IMG/VR virus record: IMGVR_UViG_3300008448_000001
Span: 1 to 64,000 of that record
Direction: 5' to 3' (one strand)
Length of the DNA stretch: 64,000 nt
In this document: positions 649 to 2,565 of the stretch, one piece after another
How positions within the stretch are numbered: position 1 is the stretch's first letter
Layout of the letters: every line of letters begins with the position of its first letter
The notes under the pieces: model-generated
Seen by the model: only the letters and a program-made list of their open reading frames with translations
Told to the model about the DNA's origin: nothing
The model's database searches: none
Made by a program: the position numbers and the translations under genes

Positions 649-2565
649 ATGAGCGGTTTTAAGGTTGGTGATGAGGTCGTTGTCGTGAGCAACAGCAGGG
701 TTGGCAAGGTTGAAAACCAAAGAACAGCTGATCGCATGTACAACGTACGATTCGAGAACGGAGAGCTGCTTTGCTACAAAGATTATGAGCTGAGCTCGGT
801 GCGTGACTTTTCCAAGGACGTGCGTCTAGCTACTGTCAGTAACGTTCGCGAACTGCTTTTGAGCGATGAGTTCGTGTCGGAATTTGCGCGGAAGTATTCT
901 GAAGCAAAGAAAGTTGTGCTGGAATCAGCTCAACCGCCAAAGGGGCACACGGAAACTCCGAATAAATGGGCTGAGAACCGTCAGGCGATTCCAATACCCG
1001 AAGGATGGCGAGAGTTGTTGGCCCATGAGGTTCCGAAAGCAAGCGACATGAATGACAGCACAGGTGCCTGGCTGGCCAGGGGGGATGGTTCGTCGAGCAT
1101 GTACTTGTACTCCGCAGCTCGCCACATTCGCAAAATCGAACCAGCGAACCCCTCGGAAACTCCGAATGGTTCGATACCGGATCCGGGCGAAGGCTACCGC
1201 ACGCCGCATCCAGGAGACGCAGGAAAGCAAGTCGAGGTGCGAGATTCCGAAGACATCCGACATTGTGATGCCAGGTGGGTTGAGCGGACTTTGGTGGCGG
1301 TTGTAGCTCTCCCTGTTGACTGCTACGACCGAAATGACATGGGGGAGTTTGTTTGCTCTACCGAAGGAAAAGACGCAAAGCACATTTGCCATCTTTGGAG
1401 ATTCGCGAGAATCAAGGAAGAACAGTCGCAAGGCATCGACACTTCGGAAACTCCGAATAGTTCGGTTCCAGAATCCAGCAGCCCTTGGGTTTCGGAAAAA
1501 CAGAAACCCGGCCCCAACGAAGTCTTTCCAAATGAAATACAGGGTGTTTGGGTCGAACCGCAACAGCCAACCGAGTGGATTCCCAAGATTGGCGATAAGG
1601 TGCGGGTAGTTAGGACGGGCAGGGTGGGTGTGAACGGTAAGTTTGGCATTATTGTCGACCTGCCGGGCTATGAGTATGCGGTGCGGATGGAGAGCGAAGG
1701 TTTCACTTTGTGTAACCTAAAGGCCGACGATCTCGAACTCATCGAGGCCGCCAACCCTTCGGAAACTCCGAAGAGTTCGACCGTTAAGCCGGGATACTTC
1801 GACGATATTGATGAAGTGTGGGTTGATGAGCCGAATCCGTTCGACGGTCGCAAGATCGAAGCAAAGCCTACCGAGTGGATCCCCAAGGTCGGGGATAAAG
1901 TGCGGGTGAACTGGCCTGGAAGGGATGGAGACAATGAGGTCGGCGTTATCGTTAATGGCGATGCCGGGGAATACGCGGTTCGGCTTGATCTAGACAACCT
2001 CATTTCGTCTAACCTTAAAGCCAGACACCTCGAACTCATCGAGGCTGCACAAGCTCCCGCCGACCATATTGCCGACGCCAACAAAATGGTTAACCCTTCG
2101 GAAACTCCGAATAGCTCGATCCCTGATCCGTTGAATTGCGTCGGCGAAGTCTGCGACCCAGCCAAACCGATTGGTGTGACCTGTTGTCCGCTTGCGATTC
2201 CTGACGGGTGGAGGGAGCTGGAACCGCATGAGATACCAATGCCGGGCGACTTGCAAGAATGGGGCGGTGCTTGGAAAGAAAGAACTTCTGTCAGCAATCA
2301 CGAATACGAATCGCATCAAATTTTTCACCTTCGCAAAATCGAAACCGCGAAGGAACCAGAGTACCGCGAGCCGACCTACGCTGACCTAGCTAACGGTCCG
2401 ATCGAGGTCGAGGTGAACGATGACGAAAGAGACGAATGTGCCTGGGTCAAGAGAATGCTGTATGCAGTGCTGCCTGCGCACGTAAGAATCCGTTTTGTCT
2501 GCAATTGGCCACGCGAAACCGGGAGTATTCACAGATGGAACTATGCTCGCATCAAAGTGAGCTAG
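649..2565 (+). CDS. mosaic multidomain phage protein (3 KOW/SH3-like domains, 2 IPxGWREL modules, 2 W-x-x-ARIK modules, SETPNSS linkers)
   Basis: 638 aa ORF with internal repeats FKVGDEV/PKIGDKVRV/PKVGDKVRV, IPEGWREL/IPDGWREL, WRFARIK/WNYARIK. Confidence 0.8.
   Translation: MSGFKVGDEVVVVSNSRVGKVENQRTADRMYNVRFENGELLCYKDYELSSVRDFSKDVRLATVSNVRELLLSDEFVSEFARKYSEAKKVVLESAQPPKGHTETPNKWAENRQAIPIPEGWRELLAHEVPKASDMNDSTGAWLARGDGSSSMYLYSAARHIRKIEPANPSETPNGSIPDPGEGYRTPHPGDAGKQVEVRDSEDIRHCDARWVERTLVAVVALPVDCYDRNDMGEFVCSTEGKDAKHICHLWRFARIKEEQSQGIDTSETPNSSVPESSSPWVSEKQKPGPNEVFPNEIQGVWVEPQQPTEWIPKIGDKVRVVRTGRVGVNGKFGIIVDLPGYEYAVRMESEGFTLCNLKADDLELIEAANPSETPKSSTVKPGYFDDIDEVWVDEPNPFDGRKIEAKPTEWIPKVGDKVRVNWPGRDGDNEVGVIVNGDAGEYAVRLDLDNLISSNLKARHLELIEAAQAPADHIADANKMVNPSETPNSSIPDPLNCVGEVCDPAKPIGVTCCPLAIPDGWRELEPHEIPMPGDLQEWGGAWKERTSVSNHEYESHQIFHLRKIETAKEPEYREPTYADLANGPIEVEVNDDERDECAWVKRMLYAVLPAHVRIRFVCNWPRETGSIHRWNYARIKVS
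950..2111. repeat. 5 dispersed copies of palindromic (TT)CGGA-AAC-TCCGAA inside the CDS (encodes [S/T]ETP[N/K])
   Basis: copies at 950-962, about 1145-1173, 1443-1457, 1758-1772, 2097-2111; core CGGAAACTCCGAA identical in all. Confidence 0.9.

What the first reader, a model, noticed from the sequence alone, without database searches (positions are those of the whole stretch)
950..2111. Protein-coding palindromic repeat used as an inter-domain linker
Seen: the core CGGAAACTCCGAA occurs 5 times within one CDS, identical even at wobble positions, each time at or near a module boundary. It is an inverted repeat (TTCGGA-AAC-TCCGAA). In some copies the palindrome extends further: CGAACC..TCGGA-AAC-TCCGA..GGTTCG at 1145-1173, and AAC.CTTCGGA-AAC-TCCGAAG.GTT near 1753-1777. 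Inference: selection acts on the DNA or RNA rather than on the SETPNSS peptide. It could be a recombination site for domain shuffling, an operator hidden in coding DNA, or a coding palindromic mini-element.
Basis: partly seen in the sequence, partly recalled or inferred. Interest (0 to 1): 0.6.

Follow-up and report, generated by a model that had tools for sequence, protein, structure and literature searches.

The report
Coding DNA palindrome joins protein modules
A 27-base DNA palindrome, kept letter for letter even where the protein code would allow change, sits in frame between the small domains of two neighbouring phage proteins; the same palindrome class turns up in many other phages at the points where gene modules are swapped, and inside a widespread bacterial defence-candidate gene, so it looks like a little-known DNA signal hidden in coding sequence.

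Summary
CGGAAACTCCGAA occurs 5 times exactly (0 expected) in one 638-aa ORF (649-2565). The full unit is 27 nt (9 codons, NPSETPNSS) and is an imperfect 25-nt palindrome. The 204.8-kb phage genome holds five more units, all in a neighbouring paralogue.

The DNA is constrained, not the peptide. Units are about 0.87 identical, while the modules they join are 0.43-0.66 identical. The codons used are not the preferred ones. Every genuine NPSETPN-coding site in IMG/VR uses the same codons. One copy carries a compensatory T-A to C-G arm change that alters two amino acids.

The unit belongs to a widespread palindrome class (AAC-NN-T[T/C]CGG-centre-CCG[A/G]A-NN-GTT). The class occurs in phage ORFs, mostly in this frame at domain junctions, and in non-coding arrays. 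In another reading frame it occurs at a fixed site in all 49 RhuM/PDC-S05 genes sampled.

Flanking modules are combined many-to-many at the units. In lambdoid Ea22/DUF551 genes, homology blocks end at the unit. Best reading: a nucleic-acid-level palindrome that serves as an in-frame joint for module shuffling, and is probably a two-fold protein-binding site. No binder and no recombinase were found in this phage. I found no description of it in Rfam or in the searched literature.

The parts
649..2565 (+). ORF of 638 aa built from small repeated modules. It has no Pfam or PHROG family. Weak leads point to SH3/KOW-like beads on a string.
   Evidence: ORF list. No Pfam or PHROG hit. The Atlas structure look-alikes are multi-KOW/SH3 proteins at low TM, a lead only. 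A weak SH3_15 hit occurs in the paralogue.
943..969 (+). Unit 0, a degenerate copy (GHTETPNKW). The core 950-962 is exact, but the outer arms are lost.
   Evidence: 9 of 27 mismatches to the canonical unit. The fold is no better than shuffles, z +0.5.
1147..1173 (+). Unit 1 (NPSETPNGS), between module B1 (IPEGWREL...HIRKIEPA) and module E1 (IPDPGEGYR...).
   Evidence: The extended hairpin gives -15.2 kcal/mol, z -4.4.
1438..1464 (+). Unit 2 (DTSETPNSS), between module E1 and module C1.
   Evidence: z -3.3.
1753..1779 (+). Unit 3 (NPSETPKSS), between the tandem SH3-like modules C1 and C2.
   Evidence: (10 of 12 pairs). Contig joints and loose ends at 1774-1778.
2092..2118 (+). Unit 4 (NPSETPNSS), between module C2 with its tail (..APADHIADANKMV) and the C-terminal B2+E2 modules.
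   Evidence: The upstream flank is 0.88 identical to paralogue unit A4 and the downstream flank only 0.35. Contig joints at 2112-2118.
649..942 (+). Module C0: N-terminal SH3/KOW-like start (GDEVVVV...) plus a helical tail.
   Evidence: Translation. Strand pattern in a low-confidence model.
970..1146 (+). Module B1 (IPEGWREL...HIRKIEPA).
   Evidence: Module B1 is 45-55% identical at the amino-acid level to B2 and to the paralogue's B1.
1174..1437 (+). Module E1 (IPDPGEGYR...RFARIKE). It is related to the C-terminal part after 2340, where B2 and E2 are joined without a unit.
   Evidence: Translation. Direct reading of HIRKIEPA-unit-IPDPGEGYR against HLRKIETAKEPEYREP.
1465..1752 (+). Module C1 (..PTEWIPKIGDKVRVV...DLELIEAA).
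   Evidence: Module C1 is 59% identical at the amino-acid level and 65% at the DNA level to C2.
1780..2091 (+). Module C2 (..PTEWIPKVGDKVRV...HLELIEAA) plus the tail APADHIADANKMV.
2119..2562 (+). C-terminal modules B2 (IPDGWREL...HLRKIETA) and E2, joined directly without a unit.

Best explanation
The five motifs are in-frame copies of a 25-27-nt DNA palindrome. It has outer arms AAC/GTT, inner arms TTCGG/CCGAA and an A-rich centre, and it spans nine codons. Together with five more copies in the neighbouring paralogue, the units separate the small modules of two phage accessory proteins.

Shown:
- The nucleotide sequence and its two-fold symmetry are what is conserved. The peptide (N-x-S/P-E-T/I-P-N/D-S-S) follows from it and acts as a Pro/Ser-rich spacer.
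- The unit is one member of a widespread palindrome class of phage and defence-island genes.
- Unrelated modules are joined in many different combinations exactly at the units.

Inferred mechanism:
- All copies are identical, lie in the same frame, and stay open when read.
- General short-homology recombination between copies can therefore duplicate, delete or swap whole modules without breaking the frame. This can happen within a gene, between paralogues or between co-infecting phages. The phage encodes no site-specific recombinase.
- The reason the sequence must remain a palindrome is most likely that it is a two-fold symmetric protein-binding site. The same class behaves like the self-operator of RhuM/PDC-S05 proteins.
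For: Nucleotide-level constraint:
- Mean pairwise identity is 0.82 for the ten units, degenerate copy included, against 0.33-0.36 for the 48-nt flanks. Homologous modules are 0.43-0.66 identical.
- Among identical amino acids, identical codons make up 0.88-0.91 in units, 0.65-0.67 in homologous flanks, and 0.53 across whole modules.
- The codons used have frequencies of 0.13-0.29 for Ser, Thr and the first Pro.
- The degenerate scan shows no synonymous freedom.

Symmetry:
- The paralogue unit at G000 204100 changed position 7 from T to C and position 19 from A to G. This changes S to P and N to D. The same double change occurs at the orthologous junction in L026.
- Class-wide covariation of positions 7 and 19.

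Same class in other frames and outside genes:
- RhuM genes in frame +2, with covariation at synonymous sites.
- 49 of 49 HMM-sampled RhuM genes carry a palindrome with at least 9 of 12 pairs at one fixed site. Control regions score 6-9.
- Non-coding arrays.

Joint:
- Unit pairs homologous only upstream or only downstream: B4-A4, A1-A5, A1-A3, B3-A3, B3-A5.
- Many-to-many module combinations in relatives.
- In lambdoid phages, homology blocks end 2-4 nt after the unit, other blocks start about 10 nt after it, and 31-39-nt matches cover the unit alone.
- The unit abuts the start of DUF551 and lies about 40 residues upstream of DUF4406.

Binding-site inference:
- The HTH helix class and the palindrome class are associated 21/21, 7/7, 4/4 and 12/15.
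- They are exchanged together as a patch inside otherwise similar RhuM genes.
Against: - No recombination event was observed directly. Only contigs were available, and the joints at unit edges come from the paralogue and from a diverged strain.
- A sequence conserved for any reason will look like a mosaic boundary.
- Recombination needs only identity, not symmetry, so the palindrome is not explained by the joint role alone.
- No binding protein was found in this phage: no RhuM and no RhuM-type HTH.
- Positions 4-5 and 21-22 do not pair in the window units, and they show no covariation in the phage-frame set.
- The relatives used for the codon test are not saturated at synonymous sites (0.65-0.67), so part of the unit identity is shared ancestry.
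- In RhuM palindromes, G-T mismatches outnumber A-C by 11 to 3. This leans slightly towards an RNA hairpin.
- The HTH-palindrome association could be due to physical linkage.
Confidence: 0.55

Rival explanations
1. Ordinary peptide linker. The nine residues are selected as a flexible or protease-resistant spacer. The DNA identity comes from recent module duplication, gene conversion and codon bias.
For: The modules really are duplicated, and some flanks are as similar as the units, for example A3-A5. The peptide is Pro/Ser-rich like many linkers. Synonymous sites of the flanks in relatives are not saturated.
Against: - The codons are not the preferred ones.
- Unit identity stays at 0.85-0.96 between copies whose flanks are unrelated.
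- Second codon positions in the centre vary freely in the class (E, G, V, A), while third positions in the arms are fixed.
- The compensatory S-to-P plus N-to-D change.
- The same 25-mer is read in other frames, in RhuM genes, and in non-coding DNA.
Confidence: 0.07
2. RNA hairpin. The unit acts in the mRNA, for example as a stability or processing signal or as a translation pause at domain boundaries.
For: - All copies lie in sense orientation in transcribed ORFs.
- Predicted hairpins beat shuffles in some copies, with z down to -4.4.
- Intergenic members often sit between convergent genes, some followed by T runs, like terminators.
- In RhuM palindromes, G-T mismatches outnumber A-C by 11 to 3.
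Against: - Several window copies fold no better than shuffles, with z from -1 to +0.5.
- The primary sequence of arms and ends is conserved across distant phages, which a generic hairpin would not need.
- At pair 7-19, T-G and C-A mismatches are equally rare.
- The centre is read in both orientations in one gene family, K or N in RhuM, so no fixed loop exists.
- No Rfam family matches.
Confidence: 0.15
3. Selfish palindromic mini-element (REP- or RPE-like) that inserts at gene ends and linkers and is tolerated because it stays open in frame.
For: - Members occur in coding frames +0, +1, +2 and on the opposite strand, and in about a quarter of viral hits outside any ORF of 100 aa.
- BIME-like arrays exist.
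- Homologous junctions exist with and without a unit, for example RRKIETAETA-unit-TWIPKIGD against RRKIEPA-QWIPRVGD.
Against: - In this 204.8-kb genome the units occur only in two adjacent paralogous genes.
- No Y1/RAYT transposase is present.
- The presence/absence differences are not clean 27-nt indels (reading).
- REP families are species-specific, whereas this consensus crosses phyla.
Confidence: 0.1
4. Site for a site-specific recombinase, like a shufflon or the Gin/Hin systems, that rearranges modules.
For: Geometry of two roughly 9-10-bp arms around a 5-7-bp centre. Clustered in-frame sites at domain boundaries. Module order differs between relatives.
Against: No tyrosine or serine recombinase in the genome. 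All ten units have the same polarity of the asymmetric centre. No invertible segment is present.
Confidence: 0.05
5. Binding sites (decoy, trigger or regulatory operators) for a host RhuM-type helix-turn-helix protein. Recombination at the units is then only a by-product.
For: - The window unit matches the commonest RhuM palindrome class (T[TC]CGG arms, AAC/GTT ends).
- In RhuM, the helix class and the palindrome class are swapped together.
- RhuM is the PADLOC defence candidate PDC-S05.
- A prophage array carries 11 units of at least three classes.
Against: - No binding has been shown.
- Helix and palindrome lie only about 12 codons apart, so co-transfer may be linkage.
- The host of this phage is unknown.
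- The phage has no such HTH.
Confidence: 0.2

Closest known systems
Conserved recombination linkers at mosaic joints of phage genes: boundary sequences of lambdoid phages, His-box motifs in T-even tail-fibre genes, and collagen-like repeats in lactococcal phage receptor-binding genes (from my own knowledge of that literature)
   Same: A short sequence is shared by otherwise unrelated modules. Homology blocks stop at it. It keeps the reading frame, so exchanged modules give functional chimeras.
   Different: Here the sequence is a 25-nt palindrome kept symmetric by compensatory change. It is shared across very distant phages. The same class also occurs outside phage genes, in RhuM genes and in non-coding arrays.
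Rickettsia palindromic elements (RPE), selfish palindromes inserted in frame in protein genes
   Same: A palindromic repeat that is translated as part of host proteins, is open in frame, and is located between structural units.
   Different: RPEs are 100-150 bp, genus-restricted, and scattered over many unrelated genes. These units are 25-27 nt, cross phyla, and in this genome are confined to two paralogous genes.
REP/BIME extragenic palindromes and their RAYT transposases
   Same: Palindromes of 20-40 nt with conserved ends and covarying stems. Tandem arrays exist, for example L359.
   Different: REPs are extragenic, carry GTAG or CGTC tags, are species-specific, and are linked to a Y1 transposase. 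Here the units are coding, end in AAC/GTT, and no Y1 transposase is present.
[quoted passage not shown]
   Same: Coding repeats whose DNA shows dyad symmetry. They spread horizontally among distant microbes and are linked to the mobilome.
   Different: PARCEL units are 25 residues (75 nt), lie in tandem tracts, and form amphipathic domains of membrane proteins. Here a unit is 9 residues and is a spacer between unrelated domains.
Recombination sites inside coding sequence: R64 shufflon sfx and the gix/hix/cix sites of Gin/Hin/Cin
   Same: Short, partly symmetric sites at the border between constant and variable protein parts. Several may occur per locus.
   Different: Those need a dedicated recombinase and inverted site pairs. 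Neither is present here.
Protein-binding repeats embedded in a coding region, such as the lambda origin iterons inside gene O
   Same: Symmetric DNA sites lie inside an ORF in the linker between two protein domains, and they constrain the codons.
   Different: The lambda iterons are tightly clustered and bound by the protein they encode. Here the units are 200-340 bp apart, and no binder is known in the phage.

Membership tests
Recombination linker / boundary sequence of mosaic phage genes | Short conserved sequence shared by modules that are otherwise unrelated | tested here: met
   Unit identity is 0.85-0.96 where flanks are at 0.2-0.4. Matches of 31-39 nt to the unit alone occur in IME10 and phiV10.
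Recombination linker / boundary sequence of mosaic phage genes | Homology breakpoints coincide with the sequence | tested here: met
   Blocks end at query 665 or 78, which is 2-4 nt past the unit, in many lambdoid phages. Up-only and down-only homologous pairs occur in G000.
Recombination linker / boundary sequence of mosaic phage genes | Recombination at the site demonstrated | not testable with these tools
   Only contigs were available for the runs holding the phage.
Rickettsia palindromic element type (in-frame selfish palindrome) | Translated in frame without breaking the ORF | tested here: met
Rickettsia palindromic element type (in-frame selfish palindrome) | Length 100-150 bp | tested here: not met
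   The unit is 25-27 nt.
Rickettsia palindromic element type (in-frame selfish palindrome) | Dispersed through many unrelated genes of one genome | tested here: not met
   All ten units lie in two adjacent paralogues. No other member of the class was found in 204.8 kb.
REP/BIME | Extragenic location | tested here: not met
   All window units are coding. Some members elsewhere are intergenic.
REP/BIME | Conserved GTAG or CGTC tag | tested here: not met
   The ends are AAC...GTT, or AGT...ACT in some RhuM genes.
REP/BIME | Cognate Y1 (RAYT) transposase in the genome | tested here: not met
   PF01797 was not found in G000, and the control genomes gave hits.
Shufflon / Gin-Hin type site-specific recombination site | Cognate tyrosine or serine recombinase encoded in the element | tested here: not met
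   PF00589 and PF00239 were not found in G000.
Shufflon / Gin-Hin type site-specific recombination site | Sites in inverted pairs flanking invertible segments | tested here: not met
   All ten units share the same centre polarity on the + strand.
Operator / iteron inside coding DNA | Two-fold symmetric site conserved at nucleotide level | tested here: met
Operator / iteron inside coding DNA | Cognate DNA-binding protein identified | tested here: inconclusive
   No RhuM or RhuM-type HTH in G000. In RhuM genes the helix class tracks the palindrome class, but binding is untested.
PARCEL | 25-residue amphipathic repeat in tandem tracts | tested here: not met
   The unit is 9 residues and occurs as single copies between different modules.
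Described structured RNA family (Rfam 15) | Match to a curated covariance model | tested here: not met
   Only tRNAs and chance-level hits were found in eight loci, including both G000 genes, RhuM loci and arrays.

The most novel reading that the evidence does not exclude
The 25-nt palindromes are operators for the N-terminal helix-turn-helix of RhuM/PDC-S05 defence-candidate proteins. Each RhuM gene carries its own operator inside its coding sequence, and that operator is exchanged together with the recognition helix as one specificity cassette. Phages carry the same operators, hidden in frame as inter-domain linkers (ten in this phage) or as multi-class non-coding arrays. These copies would titrate, trigger or exploit the host protein. 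On this reading, module shuffling at the units is a side effect of a defence and counter-defence signal written into coding DNA.
Probability: 0.2. Interest if true: 0.9.

Novelty: new variant of a known kind. Interest (0 to 1): 0.8.

Why it matters
This would be a concrete, testable DNA signal at the joints of phage protein modules. It would explain how small domains in accessory genes such as Ea22/DUF551 are shuffled in frame across very distant phages.

It also shows that part of a protein sequence can be dictated by a nucleic-acid palindrome. In RhuM genes, eight residues change wholesale while the DNA stays symmetric.

The link to RhuM/PDC-S05, a common but uncharacterised gene of restriction-modification and defence islands, gives a direct handle on that protein. 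It predicts a binding site, a specificity code (helix class against arm class), and possible phage decoys.

For annotation, such units should not be read as conserved peptide motifs.

Tried and rejected
- Pfam, PHROGs and PADLOC scans of both G000 proteins gave no family.
- blastn of the ORF against annotated phages gave no match.
- An AlphaFold2 single-sequence model of the 638-aa protein was too poor to show linkers: mean pLDDT 33. It is not used as evidence.
- The Atlas look-alikes (multi-KOW/SH3 proteins, TM 0.14-0.25) are only a lead.
- Rfam gave nothing for the units, the RhuM loci or the arrays.
- The idea that units are mainly gene-end elements turned into linkers by stop-codon loss was tested and dropped. 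Only 7 of about 180 viral instances end an ORF at the unit.
- The idea that the genome-wide hits across all phyla show one universal mobile element was corrected. About 70% of them are RhuM genes.
- A terminal-repeat or packaging role was dropped. The 101-bp terminal repeat is an assembly overlap and the position is arbitrary on a circular map.
- CsrA-type GGA hairpins, tRNA T-arm mimicry, restriction sites, parS, dif and attC were considered from memory. They were set aside because the consensus does not fit. None was tested further.
- Literature searches for the peptide strings, for DUF551 or RhuM with palindromes, and for PDC-S05 found no description of the unit.
- Read laying gave contigs only, so no starts, ends or true joints could be read.
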